From Macrostomum hystrix (Eukaryota > Animalia > Platyhelminthes), in NCBI GenBank assembly GCA_950097015.1, contig CATNEN010000001.1:20460001-20524000 (forward strand): a stretch of DNA of 64,000 nt, read 5' to 3'. The notes under the pieces are model-generated. The model saw only the letters and a program-made list of their open reading frames with translations, made no database searches and was not told the origin of the DNA. Below, piece after piece: positions 10,448-48,355 of this stretch. Position 1 is the first letter of the stretch, and each line of letters starts with the position of its first letter. The position numbers and the translations under genes are program-made.

Positions 10448-11944
10448 TTTACGATTTTAAACAAAAAAAACAGACCGATAATTTACAGAGATTTAATTTA
10501 AACAGAACCCGATAGAAAAACTATTCGCCGTTGTGTTGTTTTGGTAATTGTTTAATCAGTTTGGCTTATGCCTAAAACATAATAATTAGCATAGCACACT
10601 TTTTTAACGTTCCCTTAATTTTACTACTCCTAGTTCTACATGTAGTAGCATGTCTTGTCTAACAGGGAACATAACCTATTTAGTACGCTGAGTTACACAC
10701 TTGAAATAATTCCACACTATATTTGTGTCGTTCTGGTAGATTGAGAAATTTTAAGTCGCATACTCTCCTCACTACTTAACAACTTGACTACTGACCAGTA
10801 GTAGAGAGAGGAAAATATAATTCCCGTTTTAATCGAAGAAAACTATTTTCCCTTGACAAATTTAGAAACATTATCTTTAGAATCGAATATTTCTTTTCTT
10901 TCGCAACCTCTAGAGTCAGAAGTTTCCCAGTAACTTAAAAGTGAAAAAGACAATTAGGATAATTAATACTTTTTTGTTGATGCAATCTTTTAGCAATGTG
11001 CAGTGTTATAGTAAGCATGTATATTTAGCATAAAGATTACATATATATATATGCATACATAATAGCAAATGAACCTGATACACAACTACACGAAACAAGA
11101 GCAGAGGAGAGCAAAGATTTGGAATCCGGTTTCAATTCCGTTAAATTTCCAGCTCAAAGTAACTGAATCGAATTGCAAACTGAAAGCAAAGGACAGGAAA
11201 TTGATAGGAAATAACTAAAACTTTATCATTATTAAAGAAATAGAAAACAATGTTATCTCTGTTAATTACCATTATTTAATTACGAAAATAAATATTCGCT
11301 TACATGGTAACCTCACCAGCCTACTCACAGTAGTGTAAAATTTTAGCACTTTGAAAAACGAACTAAATTAGTGAAAACCTGGCGAAACAAATATTAAAGT
11401 TAAGGCTTATCTACTTGATTACACGGTAACAAGGCGAAAATATGATATGTATAAGACAGCTGAAATAATAGTTATTAATAAAGTAGGACACAGCCACTCT
11501 GCTAGCTTGTTAGAGCAGAAAAAAATAATTTCATGGCACACAATGAACAAATAATAATATGCAGACATTATATATAAGCCTGGTACAATGAAGGTACATT
11601 GTAGATTTATTAATTAATACATTTTATACCTCTACAAATTTACACTGCCGCACAGGCATAGGGGCTTAGTTAAGCCCAAACGCATAGATTAAACTGAGAT
11701 TAATCCGAAAATAACCAGACGGAAGCGAAGGGGGAATTGAACATGTCGTTTTCGAGTTCGGATCACAAACTAAATCGTAGATCGGATAACAAAACACAAA
11801 AAGAATTGCCAAAACGAAAATATCTATCTAAATGTCCTAAATTTACTAAACCTTATCTAAATAAAAAATCCTAAATTTAAACACATTATTCCTCTATATA
11901 AATCTAGTAATTTCCTATCTAAATCTGTTCATTCCCATTCAAGA

Positions 11945-27700: not shown

Positions 27701-30700
27701 GCTAGAGGTTTCTAGGAAACAAAGGAGATGAATGAATGGCTAGAGGTTTCTAGGAAATATAGGAGATGAATGAATGGTTAGAGGTTTCTAGGAAATATTG
27801 GAGATGAATTACCGATTAGGTAATTAGATGAAATAGATAATGAATGAAATAATTAATCAATCAACATATTCTAGGAAAACAAAGAGATTCTAAGAAAATA
27901 ACCGCTAGATTAGTACTGAGGCTCACCTGCAGGAAGTCCACAGCGGCCTCACGAAGCACCTCCTGAGCGTCGGCATCAGACAGGAACTGATCAGCGAGCT
28001 CCTTCTGCTGTTTGATATAGTACCTGGCATTCAGGGCCAGCCTGTTCCCCAGATCCTGCAGACTATCCGGAAGGGTCCGCCTGCGAATCAACGGCCCGAC
28101 ATTGACGCTGACCTCCATGAGTTTGTACTCATTGCTGGGACCGTGCAGGCCAAACTCCTGCACAGCCAGCATCACCACCTCGTGCGCCGAGGTGATGCGA
28201 TTGATGCACAGCAGCTTGAAGGCACCGTCGGGTCGAAATACTCGAATCACGTGATCGGGCAAGTCGCTGGTTGCCAGGCCGCCCACGCCAACGCTGAGAT
28301 CCGGATTCGATGCGGAGCCTTTCAGAGCCTGCCCGCCAGCCGAATGATGCTGCTCAGAGGCGCCGTTGTCGCTGCCAGCCCTGCCAGGGGCATGCTGCCT
28401 GCCCGCTGCGCGACCAAGCGAGCCGCCGCCGGCCACGCTGCCGCCATTGCCCGAATCTGATTGGCTAGCGGAGCTGGGCACGCTAGCCGCGGCCTGCAGT
28501 AGGTGCTGATGAAAGTGCAGAGGGTCCCAGCGTAGGCTGAGCTCCAGCTTGGCCTCCTGCTGCGGCTGCTGTAGTTTGGGAATAAGGAGAGTTCGAGCAC
28601 TTTTAGCTTGAGCACTGTTTTCGATGGAATAACAAATTGCAGGTTTCAGGTTATGTAATTTTACCCAGGAAGCAAAATAAGAGGATCTAAAGCATTGGGA
28701 TAATTTGAATGTGACACAGGGATCTTTAACACAGGATCCCAATCCAACAGGATCCTAAATGGGATCTGAAGAATCCCAGATCCCAGAGCGCACACAAACC
28801 TGGAGTAGCAGAGTCCGCAATTTAGTCACAGGCATCTGATCCACCGGCTGTCCGCCGATGCTGACAACCTGATCAGCAGCTCGGATGCCAGCCGCGGCGG
28901 CCGGACTGCCGTCGGCGACGTCGCGGACGAAACAGACTCCGTCGGCGATGTGAAATCGCACGCCGGCGTTCACCATAGGACAGACGGCTTTGCGCAGTCG
29001 AGACTTTGTCGAGCAGGCGATGCGAAGCAGATTCTGGGCTCCCCTCGTCTCCTCTCGACGTTCCAGTTGTCGTTCGAACTGTTGCAACAGGCGGAACAGG
29101 TCGGCGGAGTCGTCGAAATCGTTGAAATGATTGTTGGTCCACAGAAGGAACACCCGCACGGCCCTGTTGGCCTGCTCGCCGCCGCAGCCGAGGCCTTCAA
29201 TCAGTCGCTTAGCAACGGGCAGGCCGCTTTCTAAGAATGTCCGATAAGTCAGGAGGAAATCGTCGGCGTAGTTGGGATCTGAAGAGGAGCCACTGCGGCA
29301 CTCCAGCAGCTGTTCAATGAGGGCCGTGGGGGTGCCACGGATGACAGTGTGCTGTTTTTTTAGAGTGCCAGACTCCAGGGTTCGAATCTCCTTCACCAGA
29401 TGGACGCTGCCGTCAGATGCGCGAACGTCGACCGTATTCTCCGCCTCGGCTGACAGCACTGTGCAGTATTGCTCCTGTTAATTGGATTTTAGGGGAGAAA
29501 AATAGATCTTCTACGTGAAAGGTTCTTGGGAAATTTGCTGAAAAACCTTGGAATCGAGCTGACGGACCTAGATGTTTCTAAGAAACGTGTTTTTTAAGGC
29601 AAAACTTGAAAAAATACTTCCCGGAAGTTGAGAAAGGTTATAGAAATCTGTATTTATGGTAGTAACAATATTAGATAACAGAAAACAGACACGCACGACC
29701 TACCTGGGTGATGAAAGCGAAGCGACAGTTAGGCACCAGAGACCGCATCACTCCCACGTGAAACTGTCGCTCAGTGGTCGGCTTGACTCCAAAAGCGTCA
29801 CCGCAATGCAACTGCACCGGGGCATTGCCAGGACGTTGAATCTCTACTTCGCCGTCGACAATGACAGACCAGGAGTCGAGTTTCTCGCCGTCGTCCAGCA
29901 CAATTTTGCCGGGTTGTTCAACCACAGCGTAGAGCATGCAGCCGGCGAAATGTCGCTGCGTGGCCCGGGTGAAGTTTGAGAACGCGTGCAGGCGTTGAAA
30001 GGCGTCCAGCAGGCAGTCGATGTCCTCGCTGGTTCTTTCACGTGGCTCCTTCTCAAGGGCCACCAGCAGCGGACTTCGCCTTGGCAGGTCTGGGGTGACT
30101 TGGATGCCCTGTGCTGAGTCGCCGTCAAGCATGCGCATCTGCTGATGAATCTCTTCGTCGCTGTCACAGTTCTGGACGGAGCTATCCAGCTCGCCGCTGC
30201 CCGAGTAGGCGGACGAGGTGTCCGAACTGTGCGACATGCGCTTGGCGCCAGAGGAGTCGCTGAGACGCAGCAGCAGAGACTCCTGTGCGTGCATCGGCTG
30301 AGACGGGTGAGAACAGACAATTAAAAACGAGTCCTAGTCAATTCCCTTTGGTTAGATTCTTGTCCCCTGCTGCGGGCAATGGCACATCATTTGGTGACAC
30401 CAGACCCGCAGCCAGCGAGGAGGCAATTCTGCCCATTTCGCTGACTCCTGAGCACACTCTCACACAGGTGTGTACATCTGCACTGACTTTCTCATCGTCA
30501 GGCAGTGTACACTCTCACTGTGCCTTGGAGGTTGGCCCTTAAGGGTGCAAATTGCACGACAAGCCACCAAAATGAATGTGGCCTCGCCGCGGAATCGAAC
30601 TTAGGGACCTTGGTGCGAGAGGCAAACGCTTTAACCGCCCTGCCACTCACCCACCAACGTACGAGTTAAGGAGGGCTGCGGGCAATGGCACATCATTTGG

Positions 30701-33700
30701 TGACAAAGGACAATGGACCCTTTCATTTTCACTACATCCTCATTGTTTAAAATGTTCACGCCCCTGTTTTCAAATTTTATAAGTTTTTTTACATGAATTA
30801 TTATTATTATGATAAGTACACGAGAAACATTGTTAAATCACCTTATGATGCTGGTGCATCATGACAGCCCTGTCCATGCCGCCGACAGCAGCCGTGGAAC
30901 CATCCGGTGCGACAACACCTACGCCTACTGGGTGGTACATCTGATTCAGGGCCACCACTGGCCTCTGCTCCAGGTCCGGGGTGTCGATCTGAGAATAATG
31001 AGAAAGTTGATTCTGTATTTTAGACGGGGAAACGGTACATTGGTAAACATGAAAATCTCAGTTAAGGTTTAGAAGAACAAACTAAAGCATTATCGATAGA
31101 ATACGCTTGAAACCCATTGGATGAAAAATTAAATTGGATTATTTGCCTTGATGCCTGTGTTAAATCCCATTCCCAACACTGAAAATCCTCATGATTAAAT
31201 GCAATCTTTGCAATTAGGATATAGGATAATGACAGACTAGGAGACACGGGGCAAGCTGGGATATGGGATAATGATGGGCAAGCTGGTATATGGGATAATA
31301 ATGGGCAAGCTGGGATATGGGATAATGATGGGCAAGCTGGGATATGGGATAATTATGGGGCAAGCTGGGATATGGGATAATCATGAGCAAGCTGGGATAT
31401 GGGATAATGATGGGCAAGCTGGGATATGGGATAATGATGGGCCAGCTGAGATATGGGATAATGATGGGCAAGCTGGAATATGGGATAATGATGGGCAAGC
31501 TGGAATATGGGATAATGATGGGCAAGCTGGGATATGGGATAATCATGAGCAAGCTGGGATATGGGATAATGATGGGCAAGCTGGGATATGGGATAATGAT
31601 GGGCAAGCTGGGATATGGGATAATGATGGGCAAGCTGGGATATGGGATAATGATGGGCAAGCTGGGATATGGGATAATCATGAGCAAGCTGGGATATGGG
31701 ATAATGATGGGCAAGCTGGGATATGGGATAATGATGGGCAAGCTGGGATATGGGATAATGATGGGCAAGCTGGGATATGGGATAATGATATCAAGCTGGT
31801 ATATGGGATAATGATGGGCAAGCTGGGATATGGGATAATTATGGGGCAAGCTGGGATATGGGATAATTATGGGGCAAGCTGGGATTTGCAGATAGTGAAC
31901 GACTAGGAAACGAATTAAGATCCCACAGCAGTGTGGTCTTACCACAATGACTGCGCCGTGAACACGAAATCGGAACGATGCCAGAAAGTTATTCATTTAC
32001 AGAACAGAAAATGAACACACTAACTAAGCTAATTTGTATAGCCTATAAACACAGTTATCACACCAGTTTAAATACGGATTTCCCTTAGACAATGGGCTAA
32101 TATAAGCAGATGACTTACTAGTGTAAACACCACCCAAAGCACATTGTCATGCATAGGAATCGTGCAATCGTGCAATTTAAAAGCAGCATCTAGATTCGCA
32201 TCGTTCTATATATAGCTGTTTTAATTCTATCTTCTATCTATCGTCTGATTTGCAGTTAAAAGAAAAACTAATCACTATAGTAACCTATGAGAGACATTCT
32301 AAAAATATCGGAATATAGCAGCTACAATAAATGTAAGTATGGATTCAGATTAGGTCGCATACAATCAAAGTGGTAAATTGACAACATATTTTGATTTCAC
32401 TTTCACTATTTTTATTTTATATTACTCTTTTGACAGCTACGTCTTATTTTGTTCCCGTCAAATTTCTCTATCCCTTCCAACATTCTGATGTTCTATTTTG
32501 CCTTCTTAAAATTTCCTTACCTTCTCATATTCACCTTCCTTCTCATATCCTCTCTCCCTTCTCATATTCTCTCTCCCTTCTCATAGTCTCTCTCCATTCT
32601 CATAGTCTCTCTCGGACTTTTCATATCTTCCCTTCTCCTTTCTGAAATCTACTCTACCTTGTCAAATCCCCTCTACCTTGTCAAATCCTCTCTCCCTTGT
32701 GAAATCCTCTCTCCCTTGTGAAATCCTCTCTCCCTTGTGAAATCCTCTCTCCCTTGTGAAATCCTCTCTCCCTTGTGAAATCCTCTCTCCCTACTGAAAT
32801 CCTCTCTCCCTACTGAAATCCTCTCTCCCTTGTGAAATCCTCTCTCCCTACTAAAATCCCCTCTCCCTTGTGAAATCCTCTCTCCCTTGTGAAATCCTCT
32901 CTCCCTACTGAAATCCTCACTCCCTTGTCAAATCCTCTCTCCCTTGTCAAATCCCGTCTCCCTACTTATGAACTCTCAATTGGCAATGAAGCAACAAGTG
33001 CTGCCAAAACCAGTGTGAGAATGACCCAGACAACAATGCCGCAGCATTAGAGAACTCACCACAAGCAGGTCGCAGGCCTCCAAACAGATGCAGTCTTCAC
33101 GCCGGTAAATATCTCTGCCTATTCGGCGGCCGAAGCTACACAAAAAGAATGATAAAAGAAGGAATTAAGAAATACGAGTATAAATTCTGGCCTGCAATAA
33201 TCGTAAGATAAAAGCTTATCTATATGATGGATATACTAGTTTATATAATTGTATAGAATGCACGTTGAAAGCACACACATAGCTAACTTGTGTGCGAGCA
33301 CACGTGCACATAGGCTAGCAAGCCTGCTAATATACAGCATGGTGTGCAGTCTAGTACCAGACTGTGCTAGGACACCAGGGATATTGGTGTAGGCTCTTAG
33401 CGTTAACAGAGGGGGTGAGGGGGAAAGGCTAAAAGGGTGGCAGGGGCGGGTGGCAGCATTTCACAAATGTCCAATCCATGCGCTGGGATGTGAATCTCTG
33501 TAGGTCACGAGACGGGGGTGTTAGTCGTGTGTGGGTGGGGTCTTATTGTAGGCATGAAGCCTAGCAGCGCGAGTGTGATATTAAGCGAAGCGAATTATGC
33601 ATTATATAATTTACTAATGCTTAATGCTTACTGCAACATGCTTCAATACATAAGCTATGTGGGCTACGTTTCACTAATGGGTAAAATAGTAAATACTATC

Positions 33701-36418
33701 AGATAAGAAATCATTGATTACGATAAAGCATAATACAGTTCTAATACATATCATTTTCATGTTTGCCTCAGTGCAATAAAAATAGGTAATGACCAACAAC
33801 GACACTTATGACAGTATGGGAAATGACCAATCATGACACTTATGACAGTATGGGTAATGACCAACCACGACATAAATGACAGTATGAGTAATGACCAACC
33901 CTGACACAAATGACAGTATGGGTAATGACCAGCTCAAACACTAATGACAGTATGGGTAATGACCAGCTCAAACACTAATAACAGTATGGGTAATGACCAG
34001 CTCAAACACTAATAACAGTATGGGTAATGACCAACCCTGACACAAATGACAGTATGGGAAATGACCAACCCTGACATATATGACAGTATGAGTAATGACC
34101 AACCCTGACATAAATGACAGTATGAGTAATGACCAACCATGACACTAATGACAGTATGGGTAATGACCAACCATGACACTAACGACAGTATGGGTAATGA
34201 CCAAACATGACACTAATGACAGTATGGGTAATGACCAGCTCAAACACTAATGAGAGTATGGGTAATGACCAGCTCAAACACTAATGAGAGTATGGGTAAT
34301 GACCAGCTCAAACACTAATAACAGTATGGGTAATGACCAACCCTGACACAAATGACAGTATGGGTAATGACCAACCCTGACATATATGTCAGTATAGACC
34401 ATATAATGCCAGTATAGGCAATGACCGACATAATAACCTAATAACAGTTGTGATCAATTTATTGATGAGAAAAAAACTGTTTCTAAAAAATGCACACTAA
34501 ACTCACCATGTTGGCGGGAAGAACATTTTGCCGCCAAGGAAAATTGATCCGGATAGCAATATATACCAGCACGTGATACGACTGCCATTGCTGCAAATTT
34601 AAATCAGCATTACAATTATTTTGTGCTACTTACTACTTTCAAGTAGCATGGTAAAATTGTGGCAGGACAATTTAAACAAGAGAGACGTGGGTTGAGACTA
34701 ATCCTGAGGATCTGGAGTGGGTTGAGACTAATCCTGAGGATCTGGTGTGGGTTGAGACTAATCCTGAGGATCTGGAGTGGGTTGAGACTAATCCTGAGGA
34801 TCTGGAGTGGATTGGGACTAATCCTGAGGATCTGGAGTGGATTGGGACTAGTTCTGAGGATCTGGAGTGGGTTGAGACTAATCCTGAGGATCTGGTGTGG
34901 GTTGAGACTAATCCTGAGGATCTGGAGTGGGTTGAGACTAATCCTGAGGATCTGGTGTGGGTTGAGACTAATCCTGAGAATCTGGAGTGGGTTGAGACTA
35001 GTCCTGAGAATCTGGTGTGGGTTGGGACTAGTCCTGAGGATCTGGCGTGGGTTGGGACTAGTCCTGAGGATCTGGCGTGGGTTGGGACTAAGTCCTGGGG
35101 ATCTGGAGTGGGTTGGGACTAATCCTAAGGATCTGGAGTGGGTTGAGACTAATCCTGAGGATCTGGTGTGGGTTGAGACTAATCCTGAGGATCTGGAGTG
35201 GGTTGGGACTAATCCTGAGGATCGGCAGTGTTGGGATGGAACACAGAGATCAGAGGAACGCCAAGAATATAATCGGTGAATGTCACCTGAAGATGACAGT
35301 GTTGGGCACTGGATATTCCTCGTGTCGAATAATCCAAGCGATAGATTTGAGCAGATTCTCTCGATAATGCTTGAGTTCGTCAATGCTGCGCAGAAAAGCG
35401 AACAGAAAGTCGTGCTCCTGTAGCGGTGGAAAATTTGCTAGGAATGAGTTACTGTTTCTTTACATAGCAAGCATTTGAATAATTTCCAATGAAACCAATG
35501 AAAACTGACTTCAACTGACTGGATGCATTTTCAGCCTATGTAAACACAAATTTATTGCCTACCAAATTTAGCCAAGAATGTCGACAAACGATTGTGTAAC
35601 ATTCGAATTTATTCTGTTAAAATGAAATGCATCAGATAGGTATTTACACACGTTTGTAGCTCGCATAATATCATAATGCCTAACTACTGCAGTTCTGGTC
35701 AAGTGGGTGACCGCATCGCATCAACTGTCATCATGTCTATTTTTACCGCCCGTTATATTCTAGCTAATAAAGATTCGCTTGAAAGTTTCTTATCGGATAA
35801 TAATAATAATAATAGTAATAATTGCAGGAGGGCTGCCGGCAATGGCACATCATTTAGTGACACTAGACCCGCAGCCAGCGAGGACTCGAGGAGGCAATTC
35901 TGCCCATTTCGGCGGCTCCTGAGCACACACGCACACAGATACTGTACGCAGGCACACTCTCACACAGGTGTGTACATCTGCCCTGACTTTCTCATCGTCA
36001 GGCAGTGTACACCTCACTGTGCCTTGGAGGTTGGCCCTTAAGGGTGCAAATTGCACGACAAGCCACCAAGCCAAATAAATGTGGCCTCGCCGTGGAATCG
36101 AACTTAGGGACCTTGGTGCGAAAGGCAAACGCGTTAACCGCTCTGCCACCGACCCCCTTATCGGATAATAAGCCTGTCACTCTAGTTTAGACCTTTGAGT
36201 CTGTTTGATAAGATTTTTGTGCAGACCAGAAACCTGTAAGATAGTATTTTAATAACCGATTAAGAGTAAAAGCGGAGAACAGAACATCAGCTACTGAGCA
36301 TGCATAATGAGCTGGGCACACGAAGGCACACAATTTACTTGCTTCTTACCTCGTCAGTTCGCTCATGACTCGGAATGCGCAGAATTTTAATTAGGTCGCT
36401 GTAATCGTTGTTAAACAT
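12749..36418 (-). CDS. RAPGEF2: Rap guanine nucleotide exchange factor 2/6 (PDZ-GEF), complete multi-exon gene
   Basis: Domain order is cNMP-like (WYILLSGSIF), cNMP (LDSWSVIVDGEVEI), REM (VIRGTPTALIEQLL; DDFLLTYRTFL), PDZ (VADGSPAAAAGIRAADQVVSIGG), RA (PDHVIRVFRPDG...LALNARYYIK) and RasGEF (LKHFLKVAQHCRQLNNLN; IPYLPILCKDL; GLVNFEKLR), followed by two PPPY motifs and a C-terminal ITFV*. Approximate exons: 36418-36350, 35417-35287, ~34591-34507, ~33137-33059, ~30988-30842, ~30297-29704, ~29476-28799, ~28569-27927, ~17513-16956, ~16501-15989, ~15679-15504, 12834-12749. RAPGEF2 versus RAPGEF6 cannot be resolved. Confidence 0.93.
13550..14280. repeat. ~15-bp purine-rich minisatellite GGGGAAGAAAGAAAT
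   Basis: Direct reading. Confidence 0.95.
14897..15215. repeat. 16-bp minisatellite GGACAGGTGGGGAASA
   Basis: Direct reading. Confidence 0.95.
15735..15945. repeat. ~22-bp minisatellite TGTACAGAATGCTGTAGGATCG
   Basis: Direct reading. Confidence 0.85.
16640..16850. repeat. ~22-bp minisatellite CCTGAAGGGTAAGTGGAGGTTA
   Basis: Direct reading. Confidence 0.85.
18824..19873 (+). CDS. Nested intronless gene: secreted protein with a Cys-containing N-terminal module and a C-terminal LamG/concanavalin-A-like domain
   Basis: Uninterrupted ORF (track 18647-19873). The likely start is ATG 18824, followed by a hydrophobic signal peptide (MIKFAAIKALIFMIVCLSTLYSRIHG). The C-terminus (FIVAGIVFDRVSAGLRFFVN...KIGW...LRGVIRAVAVSNSAVSGDAIRNLF) resembles the LamG_3/pentraxin fold by eye. 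It lies antisense within RapGEF intron 17514-27926. Confidence 0.65.
   Translation: MIKFAAIKALIFMIVCLSTLYSRIHGVEYSAGSSYKFIKSKCLNESMSVWRKSEVSESLVNCFVSSREFRLNSVAVVQRNRQDSSCTMFRFSQVCNLLRLLQGSSSTVTTAGLRNQDCEILVDSEYDAITANQHFSAVWVGDRGPALENVVCGSGGRRNPMRSSGVMWTSEGAVMDGVKSRLWVDDPVGLDFASSYTWVLHLKRTPGKSCFIELAACSNMNSYSDHFFESSIMEGINCSLYLNPGVPSRYQTKSVLPVDPDQFIVAGIVFDRVSAGLRFFVNTEFVQDGQVMSLGQNSVFSQLNRCVKIGWRNPSAYLLRGVIRAVAVSNSAVSGDAIRNLFAGVSLKP
19952..20890. repeat. 64/66-bp satellite, first array
   Basis: ATATTTTGTTATAAATGTAGTCTCTCGGCACAATATCCTGTCACCAATGCATTATTCTGGAATC. Confidence 0.97.
21281..22297 (+). pseudogene. Degenerate paralog fragments of the nested LamG-like gene
   Basis: 21281-21402 resembles the signal peptide/IKSKC.NESMS region. 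21845-22297 matches the C-terminal half (LKRTPDKICFIELSDCS...PGVPKRYQTEPVLPADPEQFVIVGIVFDRVS...IRAVAVYNSALSGDAIRNLFAGVSLK), with a frameshift near 22075 and the middle of the gene missing. Confidence 0.8.
22400..22804. repeat. 64-bp satellite, second array (resumes at 25968-26060 after the LTR insertion)
   Basis: Same unit as the 19952 array. Confidence 0.95.
22805..25967 (+). mobile_element. Ty3/Gypsy LTR retrotransposon, internally deleted and rearranged
   Basis: 214-bp LTRs TG...CA at 22805-23018 and 25754-25967 with 2 mismatches seen, 5-bp TSD GTTAT, PBS TGGCG at 23020, purine tract GAGGAGGA before the 3' LTR. Contains a gag N-terminal fragment, RT (FSELDVAKAFHQI; WVHDDILV), RNase H (RYSQTEREALAV; VITDHKPL) and integrase (HQGHQG...C; TDNGPPF; NGATER) in RT-RH-IN order. 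Confidence 0.96.
26464..26767 (-). mobile_element. Probable non-autonomous Helitron (about 300 bp)
   Basis: On the minus strand the 5' end is A|TCTATTATATAG... and the 3' end has a hairpin GCTACAAT-N10-ATTGTGGC followed by CTTGG-CTAG|T. It sits between A and T with no TSD, which matches Helitron termini. Confidence 0.5.
27120..27810. repeat. 38-bp minisatellite GATAAATGAATGGTTAGAGGTTTCTATGAAATATAGGA
   Basis: Direct reading. Confidence 0.97.
30367..30705 (-). mobile_element. tRNA-derived SINE family A plus a short second fragment
   Basis: Family A body at 30367-30652 and a repeated 3' piece at 30669-30705. Confidence 0.85.
31250..31885. repeat. 27-bp minisatellite GGGCAAGCTGGGATATGGGATAATGAT
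   Basis: Direct reading. Confidence 0.97.
32640..32965. repeat. 19-bp minisatellite TGAAATCCTCTCTCCCTTG
   Basis: Direct reading. Confidence 0.93.
33785..34395. repeat. 34-bp minisatellite GGTAATGACCAACCCTGACACAAATGACAGTATG
   Basis: Direct reading. Confidence 0.95.
34688..35222. repeat. 30-bp minisatellite GTGGGTTGAGACTAATCCTGAGGATCTGGA
   Basis: Direct reading. Confidence 0.97.
35798..36156 (-). mobile_element. tRNA-derived SINE family A, full length
   Basis: A/B boxes on the minus strand, (ATT)n tail and TSD CTTATCGGATAATAA on both sides. Confidence 0.92.
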
Positions 36419-37409: not shown

Positions 37410-39798
37410 CTACTTGACTTGGGCTTATTTAAGTTTTTAATTTAAGTTTCTAAACTTGGGCTATATACTTCCAGTAATACAATATCAACTACCATATTAA
37501 TCTTATTTTAGGCAACCATGCCTGATGTAGGGAGGCATATAGCTAGCTAGACTAAAATTGACAGGCTTAAATTACATAAACAAAACATACTATGATAGCT
37601 AAGAGTCCTTTCTATTGCCCATGCACCAACTAGACAACAATGCTTACATATATTATTCTTTTTGTTTAAAAAATGTTCCTAAAATTGTTTTACTAAACTG
37701 TGTGTTCTTATACTAGCTATAGTAATGTTCTGCTGCACTTTTTATGGCTTTTGTGATAAAATCTACATGTGTCAAGTTGCCAAGGGTTAGATTTTTTGCA
37801 TAAGCACTAGCATATTTGATACACAAATTAACACTATGCCTCAGTACTACTATGCAAAGCCTTAAAAAATTATTGGAATTTCACCCAAACATACTGAATA
37901 AGCATGAATACAGTGCCTGCATTATTTCCATCTTTGGTTGTCACCTACCTTTATCTAGACAGATTTGCCCAACTTTTACAACCCTGATACAAATTTTCAA
38001 TTTTCACTGCTCAAGCCAAAATATTAGGCATGGCTCAACCACAGCAAACTATTGCCTGGTAACTGTCTCTCAACCAATCAGTTACCATCCAACACTGATA
38101 GCATTCAGGCACTGCCCAAAAATTATAGGGTGGAATTCCATTCACATGGTATCAAAAATAGAAAGCAAAATGGCTTGGTAGTTCAACTATTAATATATTC
38201 AAGCATTTGTTATCATAGGGCCTACTGAAAGACCATTAAACTTTTAAATAGGCTAACTTAAATACAGAAGGGAAAAAGGAATGCTTTATAAAAAATGATT
38301 AGGCAATCCATTAGAGTCTAAAATTATTCGCTTCATGAACCACTTGGTCTTGGGCATACAAAGTTACTGCCATAAAGTTATGAAACATATCAATATAACA
38401 TCACATAATATGCTTATATTACATAAATATGAAAATACAGAAATTAAATTGACCAACCTTTACAACCCAACCAAGCTAGCTATAGTATTGAAAAGAATTA
38501 TCACAAAAACAATACATGGAATAAAACAAAACTATACACTATACTGTCTTGTTGTTAGGCCCAGCAAATAGGTCTAAAACCTGTGGTTTGTAGTTTCAGT
38601 GCAGCTGCAGTGCTAAGCTAGTACCAGTCTACCAGACAGAAGGTGTGGCTTTAAGCTAGGCAAAGCTATCATTTACAAAAAATGAAAAAATAAAATGTAC
38701 AGAACACAAACTTTAAATAGGCCCTACACACAAATGGTCAGTCCATCAACTGAAGCCTCCAATTTAGGCAGTTAGAAAGGCATAGGAGGCTAGGCCTACC
38801 TAAATTTAAGATCAGGACTAGAGTGGTAGGAGACTAAGCTAGCTAGGATAACTAACAAGTAACAATAGCAAGCTATTATTGAGGCAGAACTTTATGACTG
38901 CATTTTTGCATTCAATCTTAATGGAAAATGTATTTTTTTATATTAAAAATAGGGCCTATAGACTTATGGCGGCTTATGCTTATTAGCTTAGGTGCAATCA
39001 AATAAGTTAAGGTCCTTGGCCTAGAGTCCTAGAAATGGTGCTAGAAAATTGAATCCTAATCACAAAAATATCAGATTTTACATTTAGTGGTCGAAAGCTA
39101 TGGTAAAATATATTGATAATTGACAGATGATTAACATTTATATTGTAACATAGCTACATAGGCCTCGCTGCGTCCGTCATGGAGGCTCCCCGCCGCTAAG
39201 TCAAAAGTTTAAGTCAACATAGGCCTACGGAATTAAGTAAAGAAATACGAAAACTGGTAACCGATCAATCATTAGCTTATTGGGTATATGGAAAGCATCA
39301 AACTACTACCTTAGTCAGTGTTTGGACTTTAGAGATAAGCAAAAATTTCGCGTCACTTTGAACTTCAACGAAATTTTGTGTTTTTTTTTAATTCAATGAC
39401 GAAGAAGGATTCTTGTTAAAATGGTTTTAAAGCAGATCTTTCCGGTGCAATTAGTGCCAATAACAAAAACAATTATTTTTTAATTAAGATGACAGCAAAA
39501 CGAATATAATTAATGTTTTTCAACTTTTACTAATTTTGATACATTCGATTCGAGGGATTAAATAATTGCTTTCAGCGGCATCAATAATTCACTTTTTAAA
39601 ACTTTATTTTCCAAAAACATGTTTCCTAACACCCGCTTCATATAAAGTGTGCAATAAAACTTCCTATAGAAACTTGGCTTTTAACTGAGCAACTTATACA
39701 AATAAAAAGCATTAAATGCATATTATTAGCTAAAAGCATTTGCTTTAAGTGATTGTAGTTCTCACTGAAAAAGTCCACTAACTTGGCTCAATAAAAAT

Positions 39799-41159
39799 AT
39801 GCTTGTGACCGCGATAAATAGTTTTATTGAGAGTGCTAGCATTGTTTCCTCTGAGCTACAGAATATATTTAGCGGTGAGTCTTTTTGTTGCACAAAGGCA
39901 TAACACAAAAGTTATTTTCATCGTAATTCAAGTGTAATTACCGAGCAGTTTGTATGCAGAACGTGTATGTATTTACTACATGTTTTTAGATCTGAAGAAT
40001 TTAGGCTGCTATGAAGACTTCGACAAGAAGCTGCATATCTGCGGAAAATTAATTGGTCTCTATGCCGCCATGCTCAGTCAGTAAGTCCTCTCTACGGCTA
40101 TGAATTTCGAAAAAACCTGCCTTTTAATTATGTTAGGGGCTGCTTATCTCCAATGTATTTTAGATGCCAAGCCAGCACATTCAAGGCTTTGGATTCGATG
40201 ATTAAATCGAAATTCGCTCTTGTTGAAGTTCAACAAGCCTTCGAAGACTTTCTTCAATTCGAGGCACGTTGCACTTTATATATTATCCTGCATCAGTAGT
40301 ATTAGCTCCAAGCTTTCACTACAGACAAAATATTTAATTTAAACTTCAGGCATCATGGGACGAATTTCTAGACAAGCTTGACTCGACCGCTCTGCAGCAG
40401 CAGCAACCGCAAGCCGTGCCAACCAGTGGTTCCGTCGTATCCGATGTACTTCAGACTGAGCTAATTCGTGCCTCTGACGGCAGCCAACTGCCCTTGCGCG
40501 AGCTGATTCAGTCAAAGACGCGGTCAGTTCTGTTAGTCTTCCTGCGACACCTGGCCTGACACCCCTGACAGCAGCACGTGGCAGAGTTGCAGTGGCGGCT
40601 TGTGAGATTTTTAAGCTAGCTTTAAATTCTTTTTACATACCATATTCGCAATCAATTCACTGCCATTCCAACTGAATCACAGCCAAGCCTGCACGCAGCA
40701 AACTGCCAGGCGCTGCTGATCAGCTTCGCGTCAGATCCTGCAATAATTCGCGACTGGCTAAAACGCGTCACCGATAAATCTAAAAGTGCCAAGTGCGCTA
40801 CATTTGTTTGTTCACAGCAGCAAGATCCATCATTCGAACTAGAAGCATTCGGCGATCCGCAGCGTCGTTTATATAGACGCTTCGGTTTGACAAGATCGGC
40901 CGCCAAAAGTTGGGGCGCGGCCGCGTTGCGTCACTACGCCGAGCTGGTCGCGTCCGGGGTTCGAGCCGACCGACCGGCTAATCCGGACACGGAGGATCTG
41001 CTGCAGATGGGTGGCGACTTCCTGCTTGAACTGGCTGCTGACAGCGACAGTTGCGCGCTTGTCTATGGCTACGCCGGTGTTTCGTCGACGGATAGGCCAT
41101 CGGTAGAGACTTTGGTTGCCGCTGCCACTGCAGCTTTGCCTCAGCTAGAGCGGCAGTAA
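39799..41159 (+). CDS. SELENOL: Selenoprotein L (thioredoxin-like AhpC/TSA-type fold) with a UxxU motif, 331 aa, 5 exons
   Basis: Exons 39799-39874, 39990-40080, 40164-40263, 40350-40601 and 40683-41159 join in frame (996 nt). In-frame TGA at 40557-40559 and 40566-40568 give VLLVFLRHLA-U-HP-U-QQHVAEL. Upstream FEDFLQFEASWDEFLDKLD and downstream GDPQRRLYRRFGL...EDLLQMGGDFLL...DRPSVETL match SelL motifs as I recall them. A SECIS is present downstream. Confidence 0.92.
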
Positions 41160-41398
41160 AAGCAACTGTGTCAAACAGGTCGCAGTTTGATGTTACTGCA
41201 CACATTCAAGAGATGGACCAGATGTACTTTCAGTGAAGCCGGCGCACTTTAAATGACAGCGTTCAATTTTAAACAACTTTATATTTTGATAACTAACAGT
41301 GCATTGTCACCAGCTTGAGTGCATGTCTTGTAACAGCGTCGATATTTGTCTTCTTGTTATTGTTATGTACTTCGCGAGTTAGACAGAAGTGGCGAAAA

Positions 41399-41491
41399 AT
41401 CCAACGCATCCTTGACGGATCCGATTGGAAAAGCCAGATAACAAAATTGTTGCTTGGCTCAACGGGTCCCGAACATTAAAAGCGTGTGGAT
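41399..41491 (+). promoter_or_regulatory. SECIS element (type II) in the selenoprotein L 3' UTR
   Basis: Helix I ATCCAACGC/GCGTGTGGAT; core TGAC (41413-41416)/CGAA (41470-41473); helix II GGATCCGATTG/CAACGGGTCC; unpaired AAA (41429-41431); apical mini-helix AGCCA/TGGCT. It lies about 240 nt after the stop codon and just before AATAAA. Confidence 0.85.
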
Positions 41492-41505
41492 ATAATAAGT
41501 ATAAC

Positions 41506-41511
41506 AATAAA
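41506..41511 (+). terminator. Polyadenylation signal of the selenoprotein L gene
   Basis: AATAAA 15 nt after the SECIS, followed by a GT-rich tract (TTTCGTTGTTG). Confidence 0.6.
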
Positions 41512-41557
41512 TATTTCGTTGTTGATCTGCTACATAGTCTATTTATTAATTACTATT

Positions 41558-41974
41558 TAGCTTTTGTCAGGCTATCTCAGCGAATGGGCATTCAAACTCA
41601 GCCAGCCCATCTTGTCACTGCGGTTTTTTTACTGAAGCTGCTAATTTTTACCATAGACATGCATTTTAAGATCATGCTATGTATTGCTATGTATATTGCT
41701 ACGCTTGATCTCCGTCCACGCGGAGATCAAGCGTCTTCTATCAACGTTGCTGGTTGCCCTCATTTTGGCGGAACAGCTTCAAATGCTAACAAAACTATAG
41801 ACAGAATAACGTAGAACTTATATGTTGGCTGAGATTGCTCGTCCCAAGCTGAGATAGCATGGTCCTAAAATGCATGTCTATGGCAAAAATTAGCAGCTTC
41901 AAAAAAAACCGCAGTGACAAGATGGGCTGGCTGAGTTTGAATGCCCATAGGCTGAGATAGCCTGACAAAAGCTA
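41558..41974. mobile_element. MITE / non-autonomous DNA transposon with ~130-bp TIRs
   Basis: TAGCTTTTGTCAGGCTATCTCAGC...CATGCTAT is inverted at the right end (...GCTGAGATAGCCTGACAAAAGCTA). Flanked by the 4-bp direct repeat TATT. No coding capacity. Confidence 0.85.
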
Positions 41975-41989
41975 TATTAACTATGAATA

Positions 41990-43244
41990 CACTCAGCAAC
42001 ATTTAAAACGCAACACTCTAACTAGAAGAAAAATCAAATCACCCAGAAGAGTCAAAGCGCATAGTCTATGGTTCAAATCGAGCTTCAGAAACGCGTGTAG
42101 CTTCCTCTCGCAAGTAACAGGGCGATGACTATGGACTGTTTTCAGATAGAGTGATCCAGCTGAGAGAATGGTTCAACAGATGACAGACGCGGAAAGATGG
42201 CGAGCAGTCGGAATGTTGGAAGCAGGTTGTACTCTTCGAACAGTTGCGAACTACTTCGGGAGGTCGCCTTCAACAGTTTTACGTCTGCTACAGAAGAGCA
42301 GAGCCACTGGAAGCGTGGCTCACGCGAGAAAAGGTACGGTGCTTCACCAACTTCGCAGTACAACAGCGAGGGCAGATCGACGCCTGCTGAGAATAGTGCG
42401 TGGAAACCCCACACTGCCTGCCACACTCCTGCGAATGATGTGGGCAGAGAGAAGCCGCAGAGGCAACGTTCTCAGCGCGCAGACGATTCGCCGCAGGATT
42501 CACGCTGCAGGATTGCGGTCAAGAAAAATGCGGAGGAGGTCGCGTTTGAGTCCTGCACATGTCGCTAACAGCTAGGAACTGTGGGCCATGCAGCGGGCGC
42601 ACTGGCGGCAAGGACAGTGGCAGCGCGTTATCTTTACAGACGAGAGTCGGTTTCGTCTTTTTTGCAGTGATGGTCGAATTCGCGTCTGGCGTGAGCCACG
42701 GCAAGAGCTTCTGCAGCAGCACGTGCAAAGCTGCGATGGGCAGGGACCCTCCGTACACGTGTGGGCAGGGATTTCAATGCGAGGCAGGACCCAGCTGGTT
42801 TTCCTAGACGCAAGCGTGAACGGCGATGAGACGCTCGTTTGCTGCAGACGCATCTGCTCCCTTTTGTTAACAACCACTTTGGTGGCGTCGCAAACTGCAA
42901 ACTGCATCTTCGGTGGCCTTCAAGATCCCCTGATATGAACCTAATTGAACATGTCTGGGACTTTATCAAGCGGAGTGTTCAACGGCAGAATCCGCCGCAG
43001 ACAGTCGCTGAACTGCGACGCTGTTGCTAAACGCTGTTGCTAACGCGTGGCAGGAAATTCCCCAGGACTTTTTTCGACGCCTTGTTCTGGGAATGCCACG
43101 TCGAGTCAACGCCCTGTTACTTGCGAGAGGAGGCTACACGCGTTTCTGAAGCTCGATTTGAACCATAGACTATGCGCTTTGACTCTTCTGAGTAAGTTGA
43201 TTTTTCTTCTAGTTAGAGTGTTGCGTTTTAAATGTTGCTGAGTG
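41990..43244 (+). mobile_element. Tc1-like (DD34E-type) DNA transposon, defective
   Basis: TA TSD and ~140-bp TIRs starting CACTCAGCAACATTTAAAACGCAACAC. Transposase remnant from 42168 with HTH, FTDESRF, WPSRSPDMNLIEHVW and RGGYTRF*. It is frameshifted and the second-Asp (QDNA) region is absent. Confidence 0.92.
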
Positions 43245-44335: not shown

Positions 44336-45632
44336 CGAGGGTCACTCAGAAAGTCTTTAGCCTGAGTATGATCCACGAGACGCAGAAGCATGAAATTTGT
44401 CTATGGTAAAGACCACCTTTTAAAAGTCTTATAGCTAAATTTTCAAACAGAAGCAGTTACTTTTGAGTCCACTGCAGTGAGCCAAAGTCAGTTCACCCCT
44501 TGCGCCGTTCAATTGCACAATGAAGCTGGAAAATCGTGACTTCAGAGCTATGATGTACTTGCATTTCAAGCAAGGCAAGTCGCCGGCCGATTCATTTCAA
44601 ACTTTACAAGACGTTTTCGCTCATCTGTGTTCGTCAAAAACTGGTTCGCTGAGTTTTGCCGAGGTCGAGAAAGCCTCGAAGATGAGCATCGATCCGGGAG
44701 ACCCTGCAACGCAGTGACCCCAGAAAATATCTGCGCTGTGTCCAGCATGATTGACGCTGACCGGCGAGTGACCTACCAGCAGATCCAGCAGGAGATGGGC
44801 ATTGGATCGGGGAGTGTGCACACCATTCTGCACGAACACCTCGGAGTGCGGAAGCTGGCTTCCCGGTGGATCCCCCATCAGCTGTCGGACGAGCAGAGGG
44901 ACACCCGGGTGGCTTGGTGCCGATTTATGCTGCAGAAATTCGAATCTGGGACCAGCCGGCGTATCTGGGACATCCTCACGGGAGATAAGACCTGGATTTA
45001 TCAATACGACCCCGAAAACAAGCGCCAGTCATCCATGTGGACCTTCAGAGACGAGGACAGCCCAACCAAGTTTCGACGCAACCGGAGTGTCGGCAAGCAG
45101 ATGGTGGCCTGCTTCTTCATGCGCACTGGACATGTGGCTTCCGTTTCACTGGAAGATCGCCGGACAGTCACCGCTGACTGGTACACAACGGTTTGCCTGC
45201 CCAAAGTTTTTTCTGCTTTGAGCCAGAGGCGCCCAAGGTGCGGAATGCGTGGGGTGCTTCTGCACCACGACAATGCCAGTGCGCACACGGCAGCTCAAAC
45301 TCTCGAGTTTCTGGCCGACTGTGGTGTCCAGCTGATGACTCACCCTGCGTACAGTCCAGACCTGGCACCGTGCGACTTTTTTTTATTCCCGAAGTGCAAG
45401 GAGATATTAAAGGGCCAGATTTTTTCTTCGCTGGAAGAAGCTGTGAATGAGTTCAAAGACGTCATCGGGGACCTCCGGGATGAGGATTGGCGGCAGTGCT
45501 TCGACAGCTGGTTCCACAGGATGCAAGCCTGTATCAATGCGGGGGGAGAGTACTTTGAGCAGTTGTAATGGTTTTTTAGTTCATATGTTGCTGTTTTCTT
45601 GTTCAGGCTAAAGACTTTCTGAGTGACCCTCG
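44336..45632 (+). mobile_element. mariner (DD34D) DNA transposon, nearly intact
   Basis: TA TSD and ~28-bp TIRs CGAGGGTCACTCAGAAAGTCTTTAGCCTGA. Transposase from ATG 44520 to 45568 with one frameshift near 44630. Motifs WIPHQL, TGDKTW, HHDNASAH and YSPDLAPCDFFLF. Confidence 0.96.
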
Positions 45633-46497: not shown

Positions 46498-48355
46498 TCA
46501 AACTAGTGTGGTCCAAAGCCAGATCAGCACATTGCAGACACCCGCGAATGCTAGACAGACGAGCAGCCGTCTGGGCCGAAGCCACGGCGCCAGCATAGCC
46601 GACAATCCGTTCGGCTTGCTGTCTGAACTGTCGAATCCGCCGCCGCTGCCATTGCCGCCACTGCCGTAGCGAGTCACGCGGAGCATAAACACGGCCCTGG
46701 AAATCACTAGGAACAGCGCCAGAGCGGCTAGCACCAGGGCCATGAAGAAGGCCAACGAATGCTGACGATGCCGGGTGTGAGCTTCGCTAAGCTGCTGCTG
46801 CTGCTGCTGCTGATGTTGATGCTCATTGCCCTGACGCTGGCGCAGGTGATGCACGTGATGGGACCCGGCATCGTGTCGGCGGCCGGAGCTTACGTAATCT
46901 TCGTGGTTGGATGCCAGCGCTGGCGGGTCGGATGCTCGCGGCTTGGGTCGACGCCTTGGCAATATCGGCATTTTCTCGAGCGTTTCTTGCTCTTCTTCGG
47001 CGGCCGAGTCGTTACTAAAACGACTAACCCGACAGGAGCCGGGACCGCTCGCGACGCCAACAGAGATGCCGCGGGCCCGCATTCGACAGCGATGCTCTTC
47101 AAGGCGTCGGCCAGCGGCCAGCAGGTCCCTGGTGGACTCTGGCTCGCTCCAGAGCCGCTCGGCCACTGCGGACGCCAAAGGCCTGCGGGAGGATGGAATT
47201 ATGTGTGGTACTCGGCGTGGTATTGTGTGTGGTACTCGGTGTGGTATTGTGACGGCATTCGATGTGGTATTGTGTGTGGTACTCGGTGTGGTATTGTGTG
47301 TGGTACTCGGTGTGGTATTGTGTGTGGTACTCGGTGTGGTATTGTGTGTGGTACTCGGTGTGGTATTGTGACGGCATTCGGTGTGGTATTGTGTGTGGTA
47401 CTCGGTGTGGTATTGTGTGTGGTACTCGGTGTGGTATTGTGTGTGGTACTCGGTGTGGTATTGTGACGGCATTCGGTGTGGTATTGTGTGTGGTACTCGG
47501 TGTGGTATTGTGTGTGGTACTCGGTGTGGTATTGTGACGGCATTCGGTGTGGTATTGTGTGTGGTACTCGGTGTGGTATTGTGTGTGGTACTCGGTGTGG
47601 TATTGTGTGTGGTACTCGGTGTGGTATTGTGACGGCATTCGGTGTGGTATTGTGTGTGGTACTCGGTGTGGTATTGTGTGTGGTACTCGGTGTGGTATTG
47701 TGACGGCATTCGGTGTGGTATTGTGTGTGGTACTCGGTGTGGTATTGTGTGTGGTACTCGGTGTGGTATTGTGTGTGGTACTCGGTGTGGTATTGTGACG
47801 GCATTCGGTGTGGTATTGTGTGTGGTACTCGGTGTGGTATTGTGTGTGGTACTCGGTGTGGTATTGTGACGGCATTCGGTGTGGCATTGTGCGTGGTATT
47901 CTGTGTGACATTGTGTGTGGTACTCGGTGTGGTATTGTGACGGCATTCGGTGTGGCATTGTGCGTGGTATTCTGTGTGACATTGTGTGTGGTACTCGTTG
48001 TGGTATTGTGACGGCATTAGGTGTGGCATTGTGTGCGGTACTCGGTGTGGTATTGTGTGTGGTACTCAGTGTGGCATTGTTTATGGTACTCGGTGTGGCA
48101 TTGTTTGTGGTACTCGGTGTGGCATTGTTTGTGGTACTTAAATTGTTTTTGGTCAACAATTGCTTGTTTGTGGAACAATGCGGTAGGGATATATTTTTTA
48201 GCCAATATAGTGGTCGGAAGCTCACCAGATTCTCTGGAGCACAGTGCCATCGTTCTGGTATTCGTTCCACATGCAGGCCTCACCGCCAAGAACGTTAGAC
48301 ATCCAAGATGGCTTTGACTCTGCAGCTGGAGGCTGCCGTTGCTGCTGCTGCTGCC

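What the first reader, a model, noticed from the sequence alone, without database searches (positions are those of the whole stretch)
39799..41511. Hidden selenoprotein L gene with a double-selenocysteine UxxU motif
Seen: five exons splice into one 331-codon frame broken only by two TGA codons separated by two residues (CTG CGA CAC CTG GCC TGA CAC CCC TGA CAG CAG CAC = LRHLA-U-HP-U-QQH). They sit at the end of a hydrophobic beta strand, where a thioredoxin-fold CxxC would be. Coding-like sequence continues for about 170 codons (DPQRRLYRRFGL, QMGGDFLL, DRPSV), and a SECIS and poly(A) signal follow. Established: SelL is the selenoprotein with a UxxU motif that can form an intramolecular diselenide, reported mainly from fish, some aquatic invertebrates and marine bacteria. 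Inference: this is a functional gene needing two UGA recodings 9 nt apart, and standard annotation would split or truncate it (the ORF track shows only 40887-41159). If the host is a flatworm it may extend the known distribution; I cannot verify that here.
Basis: partly seen in the sequence, partly recalled or inferred. Interest (0 to 1): 0.92.

Follow-up and report, generated by a model that had tools for sequence, protein, structure and literature searches.

The report
Selenoprotein L gene in a flatworm
This is a real five-exon gene for selenoprotein L, a redox protein with two selenocysteines three residues apart, in the free-living flatworm Macrostomum hystrix; a 2013 survey had inferred that flatworms lost this protein.

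Summary
Five exons (39799-41159, +) give 331 codons plus TAA. The frame is broken only by TGA at 40557-40559 and 40566-40568 (LRHLA-U-HP-U-QQH).

Each exon, aligned on its own, maps in order onto full-length relatives. The two TGAs fall on the C-x-x-C pair of the Cys forms. In five clusters they fall on W-x-x-W, which I infer to be TGA read as Trp.

A homologue models confidently as a peroxiredoxin-like fold, with the pair at the strand-to-helix junction. The best PDB match is human prostamide/PGF synthase.

A form-2 SECIS-like hairpin lies 240 nt after the stop (41399-41491). It is the best such site in 128 kb and is built like seven control SECIS of this genome. It starts UUGA, not AUGA, and Rfam misses it. 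AATAAA follows at 41506.

The genome has tRNA-Sec, SepSecS, SPS, and GPx and Sep15-type exons with in-frame TGA.

New member of a known family. The scan had noted other selenoprotein genes in this genome, but not SelL.

Not shown: transcription, the GC-AG intron 3, and Sec insertion.

The parts
39799..39874 (+). Exon 1. ATG at 39799, 25 codons plus 1 base, donor gcg|GTGAGT.
   Evidence: An in-frame TGA at 39766 lies upstream of the ATG. This exon aligns to the N-terminus of full-length relatives.
39990..40080 (+). Exon 2 (91 nt). Acceptor ttttag|, donor tca|GTAAGT.
   Evidence: The peptide KKLHICGKLIGLYAAMLS aligns to the KMSIFGKAIGQYSQYL region of relatives.
40164..40263 (+). Exon 3 (100 nt). 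It ends at a GC donor (gag|GCACGT), so intron 3 is inferred to be GC-AG, 86 nt long.
   Evidence: enumerated all frame-keeping donor and acceptor pairs. Only this one keeps both FEDFLQFE and ASWDEFLD, which align to the conserved E-W-D-x-F-L block.
40350..40601 (+). Exon 4 (252 nt, phase 0 at both ends). It holds the linker, strand beta-1 (SVLLVFL) and the U-x-x-U motif.
40557..40559 (+). First in-frame TGA, read as selenocysteine 1.
   Evidence: It aligns with the first Cys of C-x-x-C in P0065, P0026 and P0027. It aligns with the first W (TGA) in P0005, P0022, P0046, P0059 and P0149.
40566..40568 (+). Second in-frame TGA, read as selenocysteine 2. It lies 9 nt after the first.
   Evidence: It aligns with the second Cys or W of the same homologues. 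In the homologue model this position is in the first turn of the helix.
40683..41159 (+). Exon 5 (158 codons plus TAA). It encodes the rest of the peroxiredoxin-like domain.
   Evidence: PF13911, E 3.5e-6. 134 library hits. 55% identity to Macrostomum lignano A0A1I8IZH1 residues 166-319. It is the only PF13911 locus in the genome.
41399..41491 (+). SECIS-like hairpin, form 2. Helix I is 41399-41407 paired with 41482-41491. The core is UUGA at 41412-41415 opposite GA at 41471-41472. Helix II has 10 bp. Unpaired AAA is at 41429-41431, followed by a mini-stem and a 4-nt loop.
   Evidence: MFE is -32.4 kcal/mol, z = -3.0, and 0 of 200 shuffles fold as well. It has the same build as 7 control SECIS of this genome, except U for A before UGA.
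41506..41511 (+). AATAAA poly(A) signal, 15 nt after the hairpin.
   Evidence: Its use is not verified, because no reads were available.

Best explanation
The locus is the single-copy selenoprotein L (SELENOL) gene of Macrostomum hystrix.

The mRNA joins five exons into a 331-codon frame. The N-terminal ~170 residues form a helical extension shared with other animal SelL-type proteins. The C-terminal ~160 residues form a peroxiredoxin-like-2 (PF13911) thioredoxin-fold domain.

The two active-site positions (C-x-x-C in Cys forms) are encoded by UGA codons 9 nt apart. A form-2 SECIS hairpin in the 3'UTR lies about 775 nt downstream of them in the mRNA. It would recruit SBP2, eEFSec and Sec-tRNA(Sec), so both UGAs are read as selenocysteine. 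The product is a U-H-P-U redox centre that can cycle between a diselenol and an intramolecular diselenide.

Shown here: the gene structure by homology, the motif position, the SECIS-like structure, and the presence of Sec machinery genes. Inferred: splicing (including a GC-AG intron 3), use of the UUGA-core hairpin as the SECIS, Sec insertion at both codons, and the redox function.
For: (1) The frame is 996 nt with only two internal stops, both TGA, and 169 open codons after them.

(2) Each exon, aligned separately, maps in order onto full-length relatives of 306-363 aa. The TGAs fall on C/C in P0065, P0026 and P0027, and on W/W in five clusters.

(3) W stands for TGA. The gene call P0140 ends at ...LLRHFA, exactly before the first W of its cluster mates P0046 and P0142. 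P0139 restarts after the motif.

(4) The domain is PF13911, and the atlas hits are all AhpC-TSA_2. The AF2 model of homologue P0149 has pLDDT 90, with strand 54-60, U/W65 just before helix 66-77, and U/W68 in its first turn. The top PDB match is human prostamide/PGF synthase, whose C44S/C47S double-mutant entry names two Cys three residues apart; E 2e-11, TM 0.82.

(5) The SECIS-like hairpin was the only hit of a strict scan over both strands of the 64-kb window. It was the best of three hits with a descriptor that recovers 6 of 7 control SECIS. z = -3.0.

(6) Sec machinery and other selenoprotein genes are present. tRNA-Sec(TCA) scores 78.5 bits and is confirmed by ARAGORN. SepSecS and SPS/selD are found. 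Two GPx exons and a Sep15-type exon carry an in-frame TGA.

(7) The M. lignano orthologue keeps exon 5 (55% identity, E 1e-51) and the same downstream neighbour.
Against:
- The SECIS core begins UUGA, whereas all seven control SECIS of this genome begin AUGA.
- Rfam SECIS_1 gives no hit. It also misses 6 of 7 controls, so this weighs little.
- My scanner criteria were set partly after seeing the hit.
- No orthologous 3'UTR was available to test covariation.
- The UxxU exon of the M. lignano orthologue could not be seen.
Confidence: 0.85

Rival explanations
1. The gene is real, but the UUGA hairpin is not the working SECIS. Either Sec insertion uses another element, or the U weakens it so that most ribosomes stop at the first UGA and nonsense-mediated decay keeps output low.
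For: All seven control SECIS in this genome start AUGA. Rfam does not score the hairpin. A weaker AUGA-type candidate exists at 42435-42483.
Against: The 42435 site lies inside a Tc1-type transposase ORF, 1.3 kb past the stop and beyond the AATAAA. It has an AGAC 3' side and no AAA. Nothing else in 128 kb fits the descriptor as well as 41412. The hairpin shares arm length, AAA, the CGAA 3' side and the mini-stem with the controls.
Confidence: 0.25
2. It is a decaying pseudogene or a truncated gene. The TGAs are true stops, and only the 191-residue N-terminal part, or nothing, is made.
For: There are two premature stops by the standard code. There is no expression evidence. Intron 3 needs a non-GT donor.
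Against: 169 codons after the stops stay open and conserved. Identity is 55% to M. lignano and 45% to a metagenome protein, and DRPS and QMGGDF are kept. The stops are exactly the two active-site codons, and both are TGA. Homologues carry TGA at the same two places. A SECIS-like hairpin follows. The gene is single-copy, with no Cys paralogue to replace it.
Confidence: 0.07
3. Assembly error: the true codons are TGC or TGT (Cys), and this is a Cys-form peroxiredoxin-like 2 protein.
For: Cys forms of the family exist (P0065, P0026, P0027). No reads could be laid on the region.
Against: It would need two independent errors, both producing TGA, at exactly the two positions where relatives also have TGA. 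The published assembly is polished, with reported QV 42.8 (PMC10468722).
Confidence: 0.03

Closest known systems
Selenoprotein L (SelL/SELENOL) of fish and aquatic invertebrates
   Same: Both have a peroxiredoxin-like PF13911 domain, two Sec codons forming U-x-x-U at the C-x-x-C site, a long N-terminal extension, a single 3'UTR SECIS, and a length of ~300-335 aa (PMC13134290; PMC3473315).
   Different: The motif reads U-H-P-U, against U-L-P-U or U-D-P-U in the relatives seen here. Exon 5 has a ~20-residue insertion shared with M. lignano. The SECIS core is UUGA. The host phylum had been reported to lack SelL (PMC3828610).
Human prostamide/prostaglandin F synthase (PRXL2B; PDB 9usa, 9us9)
   Same: It is the best structural match to the modelled homologue (E 2e-11, TM 0.82). 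The mutant entry's title names Cys44 and Cys47, three residues apart.
   Different: It has Cys, not Sec. It lacks the N-terminal extension. Sequence identity is ~19%, so it is a paralogous family member, not an orthologue.
Short Cys-form Prx-like proteins (P0026, P0027; probably prokaryotic, which is my inference from their length and the atlas taxa)
   Same: They share the domain and the RH-x-x-C-x-P-C motif, and GDP-x-R-x-LYR, LQ(M/L)GGDF and DRPS are conserved.
   Different: They have Cys at both positions and no N-terminal extension. They are 177-192 aa long.
Peroxiredoxin Q / BCP
   Same: Same overall thioredoxin-like peroxiredoxin fold (ranks 3-9).
   Different: Sequence identity is only 12-18%. 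I did not compare the active-site motifs here.

Membership tests
Selenoprotein L (SELENOL) | Peroxiredoxin-like 2 / AhpC-TSA_2 (PF13911) thioredoxin-fold domain | tested here: met
   Exon 5 matches PF13911 at E 3.5e-6, 27.8 bits against a cut-off of 27. All top atlas hits carry PF13911. The homologue model and its PDB matches agree.
Selenoprotein L (SELENOL) | Two in-frame UGA codons forming U-x-x-U at the position of the C-x-x-C redox pair | tested here: met
   TGA at 40557 and 40566. They align to C/C and to W(=TGA)/W in relatives. The position is the strand-to-helix junction.
Selenoprotein L (SELENOL) | N-terminal extension in line with that of other animal SelL-type proteins | tested here: met
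   Exons 1-3 and the start of exon 4 align in order to P0005, P0022, P0046, P0059 and P0065, including the E-W-D-x-F-L block.
Selenoprotein L (SELENOL) | Relatedness to records named selenoprotein L | tested here: inconclusive
   Hit P0007 (38% identity, E 1.3e-9) shares a 90% cluster with KAK6997796.1, 'selenoprotein L [Biomphalaria glabrata]'. That record lacks the motif segment. No tree was built against PRXL2A/B/C, because no named sequences of those were on hand.
Selenoprotein L (SELENOL) | Eukaryotic SECIS element in the 3'UTR | tested here: inconclusive
   A form-2 hairpin at 41399-41491 has a GA quartet, a 10-bp helix II, AAA and a mini-stem. Its core is UUGA, not A/GUGA, and there is no Rfam hit. 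Rfam also misses 6 of 7 control SECIS.
Selenoprotein L (SELENOL) | Host genome encodes the Sec machinery | tested here: met
   tRNA-Sec(TCA) at C7:11150106-11150191. SepSecS on C26. SPS/selD on C1. GPx and Sep15-type exons with in-frame TGA and nearby SECIS. SBP2 and eEFSec were not searched.
Selenoprotein L (SELENOL) | Transcript with the predicted junctions; Sec inserted at both UGAs; diselenide formed | not testable with these tools
Labelling and mass spectrometry are bench work.

The most novel reading that the evidence does not exclude
The SelL mRNA of Macrostomum is decoded through a SECIS whose core quartet begins UUGA instead of AUGA or GUGA. That would be a working non-canonical core serving two UGAs 9 nt apart. 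Other first-stage notes report a SelN gene in this genome, which I did not check. If both genes are real, SelL and SelN were not lost at the root of flatworms. They would have been lost later, after the macrostomid lineage split off.
Probability: 0.45. Interest if true: 0.55.

Novelty: new member of a known kind. Interest (0 to 1): 0.42.

Why it matters
The finding corrects the published picture of flatworm selenoproteomes. The 2013 survey of a planarian, a fluke and a tapeworm concluded that SelL was lost before flatworms diverged (PMC3828610). An intact SelL in an early-branching free-living flatworm moves that loss to a later point.

It also shows that public Macrostomum gene models hide this gene. 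In M. lignano, exon 5 is buried in 993-aa and 3935-aa mis-fused UniProt models.

The genus Macrostomum includes a transgenesis-capable model species (M. lignano). That offers a system to study how one SECIS serves two adjacent UGAs, and whether a U-initial SECIS core works.

It is not a new kind of system. SelL and its UxxU motif have been known since 2007 (date from my own knowledge).

Tried and rejected
- **Rfam.** A search of 39000-42500 and of the 3'UTR alone gave no SECIS. SECIS_1 over the whole genome also gave none. I judged this uninformative after the control, where only 1 of 7 SECIS next to selenoprotein genes was found, at 17 bits.
- **Covariance model of this genome's SECIS.** R1, built from two SelW SECIS, was too specific. 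MAFFT could not put the 3' arms of the other seeds in register, so no second model was built.
- **Fetching DNA of UxxU homologues.** So W = TGA rests on the split gene calls P0140 and P0139.
- **SelK and SelO.** Pfam searches of the genome found nothing, which does not show absence.
- **Literature on UUGA cores.** Two searches found nothing.
- **GT donors for intron 3.** I rejected them because each deletes conserved residues.
- The five exons were never joined for a search or a fold. No protein read through a stop was sent to a search or fold tool. Exons were handled one by one by reference, with X at the two TGAs inside my script.

Full report
**What is in the sequence**

Between 39799 and 41159 on the + strand, five exons give one frame of 996 nt, which is 331 codons plus TAA. 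The exons are 39799-39874, 39990-40080, 40164-40263, 40350-40601 and 40683-41159.

The introns are 81-115 nt long and 33-37% G+C. The last two exons are 57% G+C.

The frame is broken only by TGA at 40557-40559 and 40566-40568, which reads LRHLA-U-HP-U-QQH. After the second TGA, 169 codons stay open. The mechanical ORF list shows only 40887-41159 here.

It keeps the frame only with a GC donor (gag|GCACGT). I enumerated every GT or GC donor and every AG acceptor that keeps both frames open. Every GT alternative deletes residues that are conserved in relatives.

**Gene model tested by homology**

Each exon was translated by reference and handled alone. Inside my script the two TGAs were written as X.

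- Exon 5 alone matches Pfam PF13911 (AhpC-TSA_2) at E 3.5e-6.
- Its language-model neighbours are all AhpC-TSA_2 clusters.
- A full HMMER pass over 1.8 billion representatives gave 134 hits.
- Added as fragments to an alignment of full-length relatives of 306-363 aa (P0005, P0022, P0046, P0059, P0065), exons 1 to 5 land one after another without overlap.
- The exon 3/exon 4 junction (…FEDFLQFE|ASWDEFLDKLD…) falls on the conserved E-W-D-x-F-L block. This supports the GC-AG intron.

**The two TGAs**

In the same alignment the two X fall on Cys/Cys in P0065 (a tarpon record, FACLLCRIH) and in the short forms P0026 and P0027 (C-L-P-C, C-I-S-C). They fall on Trp/Trp in five independent clusters (…LLRHFA-W-LP-W-RDH…).

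These W residues are TGA codons read as Trp by a gene caller. In the cluster of P0046, one call (P0140, 156 aa) ends at …LLRHFA, exactly before the first W. A second call (P0139) resumes after the motif.

An AlphaFold2 model of homologue P0149, made with a 20-sequence alignment, reached pLDDT 90. It has strand 54-60 (HLLLILL). The first W/U is at residue 65, just before helix 66-77. The second is at residue 68, in the first helical turn. That is the classic thioredoxin-fold active-site location.

Foldseek's best PDB match is human prostamide/prostaglandin F synthase (9usa, the C44S/C47S mutant; E 2e-11, TM 0.82). Peroxiredoxin Q/BCP proteins follow.

**SECIS**

Rfam finds no SECIS in the 3'UTR or anywhere in the genome. 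That negative is uninformative, as the control below shows.

I located seven SECIS beside selenoprotein-family exons of this genome: two GPx, three Rdx/SelW-type and two Sep15/SelM-type. In-frame TGA codons were seen in three of those seven matched exons (both GPx and one Sep15/SelM). Rfam SECIS_1 finds only one of the seven, at 17 bits against a threshold of 35.

A constrained-folding scan of the 3'UTR gave one outstanding candidate. Its layout from 5' to 3' is:
- UUGA-C at 41412-41416;
- a 12-nt arm;
- unpaired AAA at 41429-41431;
- a mini-stem with a 4-nt loop;
- the return arm;
- C-GA-A at 41470-41473.

The inner-stem energy is -22.3 kcal/mol.

The unconstrained fold of 41385-41500 adds a 9-bp helix I and the usual internal loop. 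MFE is -32.4 kcal/mol, z = -3.0, and none of 200 shuffles folds as well.

With strict criteria it was the only hit on both strands of the whole 64-kb window. A descriptor tuned on the seven controls recovers six of them. At or below -12 kcal/mol it gave three hits in 128 kb, and this one was the best. The second hit (42435) lies inside a Tc1-type transposase ORF.

All seven controls read ATGA[C/T], then an 11-13-nt arm, then AAA, then [C/T]GA. The SelL hairpin has the same build except for U in place of A before UGA. To my knowledge A (sometimes G) is the rule there; PMC3473315 reports GUGA cores in sponge. Two literature searches for U-initial cores found nothing.

I therefore rate the SECIS as structurally convincing but atypical in one conserved base. 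My criteria were partly set after seeing the hit, and no orthologous 3'UTR could be fetched to test covariation. AATAAA follows at 41506-41511.

**Sec machinery**

- tRNA-Sec with anticodon TCA is at C7:11150106-11150191 (78.5 bits, confirmed by ARAGORN).
- A three-exon SepSecS gene is on C26.
- An SPS/selD gene is on C1.
- Two GPx exons and a Sep15-type exon each carry one in-frame TGA.
- Earlier first-stage notes of this scan list SelN, SelK and SelW genes elsewhere in this genome. I used them only as leads.
- The SelL gene is single-copy and is the only PF13911 locus found.

**Organism and prior knowledge**

The genome handle has 220,453,370 bases in 42 contigs. These are exactly the figures for the Macrostomum hystrix assembly in Table 1 of Wiberg et al. 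2023 (PMC10468722).

The two closest proteins are M. lignano UniProt models A0A1I8IZH1 (993 aa) and A0A1I8FVG9 (3935 aa). In both, the SelL exon 5 is embedded in a mis-fused prediction. Identity to the first is 55% over 160 residues.

The same M. lignano model then continues into a stretch that is 82% identical to window 46907-47371, so the downstream neighbour is conserved. In M. hystrix the neighbour lies about 6 kb away. Transposon remnants lie in between.

The only flatworm selenoproteome study found covers Schmidtea, Schistosoma and Taenia. [quoted passage not shown]

SelL is otherwise known from sponge, Trichoplax, Nematostella, Capitella and amphioxus (PMC3473315). It is also known from nearly all vertebrates except tetrapods (PMC13134290).

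**How it most likely works**

Shown: the gene anatomy, the motif position, the SECIS-like fold and the machinery genes.

Inferred: the spliced mRNA is translated with both UGAs, 9 nt apart, recoded to Sec through the single 3'UTR SECIS about 775 nt downstream. This would give a ~36-kDa protein whose U-H-P-U pair sits at the N-terminus of helix alpha-1 and cycles between diselenol and diselenide. It would act as a peroxiredoxin-like or thioredoxin-like oxidoreductase whose substrate is unknown.

**Verdict**

This is a real and correctly read gene. It is a new member of a known family in a phylum thought to lack it. It has two minor oddities, a UUGA SECIS core and a GC-AG intron.

Interest is moderate. 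It corrects an inferred gene loss and flags mis-annotation, but it adds no new mechanism unless the U-initial SECIS proves functional.

Noticed in passing
window 41555-41977: A MITE-like element lies 44 nt after the SelL poly(A) signal. Its terminal inverted repeats are about 125 nt long (41555-41680 against 41854-41977) and 91-96% complementary.
   Followed up: partly
window 42168-42575 and 44627-45568 (+): There are two transposase remnants. The first is Tc1/Tc3-type, with HTH domains only (PF01498, PF13936). The second is a mariner-like 313-aa ORF (PF01359, PF13358). They separate SelL from a neighbour gene that lies much closer in M. lignano.
   Followed up: partly
window 23161-25639: Retrotransposon pol remnants on the + strand: an ORF with reverse-transcriptase-like motifs (by eye, not checked against Pfam), followed by an integrase ORF matching PF00665 and PF17921.
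   Followed up: partly
window 16848-17570, 28755-29459, 29671-30294 (-): Exons of a large minus-strand gene carry RasGEF, RasGEF_N and PDZ domains. The 29671-30294 ORF had no Pfam hit. I read the gene as a PDZ-GEF/RapGEF-type exchange factor. Minisatellites that read as long false ORFs lie between these exons.
   Followed up: partly
window 38-898, 1037-1504, 9668-10515, 13414-14414, 31214-31996, 34616-35383, 46498-48270, 51403-52124, 55694-56316: Many minisatellite arrays produce long repetitive ORFs on both strands (for example the THSL and HTEYHTQY repeats). They dominate the ORF list and are not genes.
   Followed up: no
window 39572-39641 (-): A weak AT-rich SECIS-like hairpin (ATGAA…AAA…TGAA, -11 kcal/mol) lies on the opposite strand just upstream of the SelL start. 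No minus-strand coding sequence sits in a position to use it, so it is probably chance.
   Followed up: no
loci L023-L027, L031, L032 (G000 C34, C39, C1, C2): Seven SECIS beside GPx, SelW/Rdx-type and Sep15/SelM genes of this genome share ATGA[C/T], a 12-nt arm and AAA. Rfam SECIS_1 detects only one of them, and that one below threshold. Rfam-based screens will miss selenoprotein genes in this genome.
   Followed up: yes
proteins P0002, P0003, P0151, P0007: Public models of SelL relatives are faulty. M. lignano A0A1I8IZH1 and A0A1I8FVG9 fuse SelL exon 5 into 993-aa and 3935-aa chimeras. The Biomphalaria glabrata record named 'selenoprotein L' (KAK6997796.1) skips the segment holding the UxxU motif.
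   Followed up: partly
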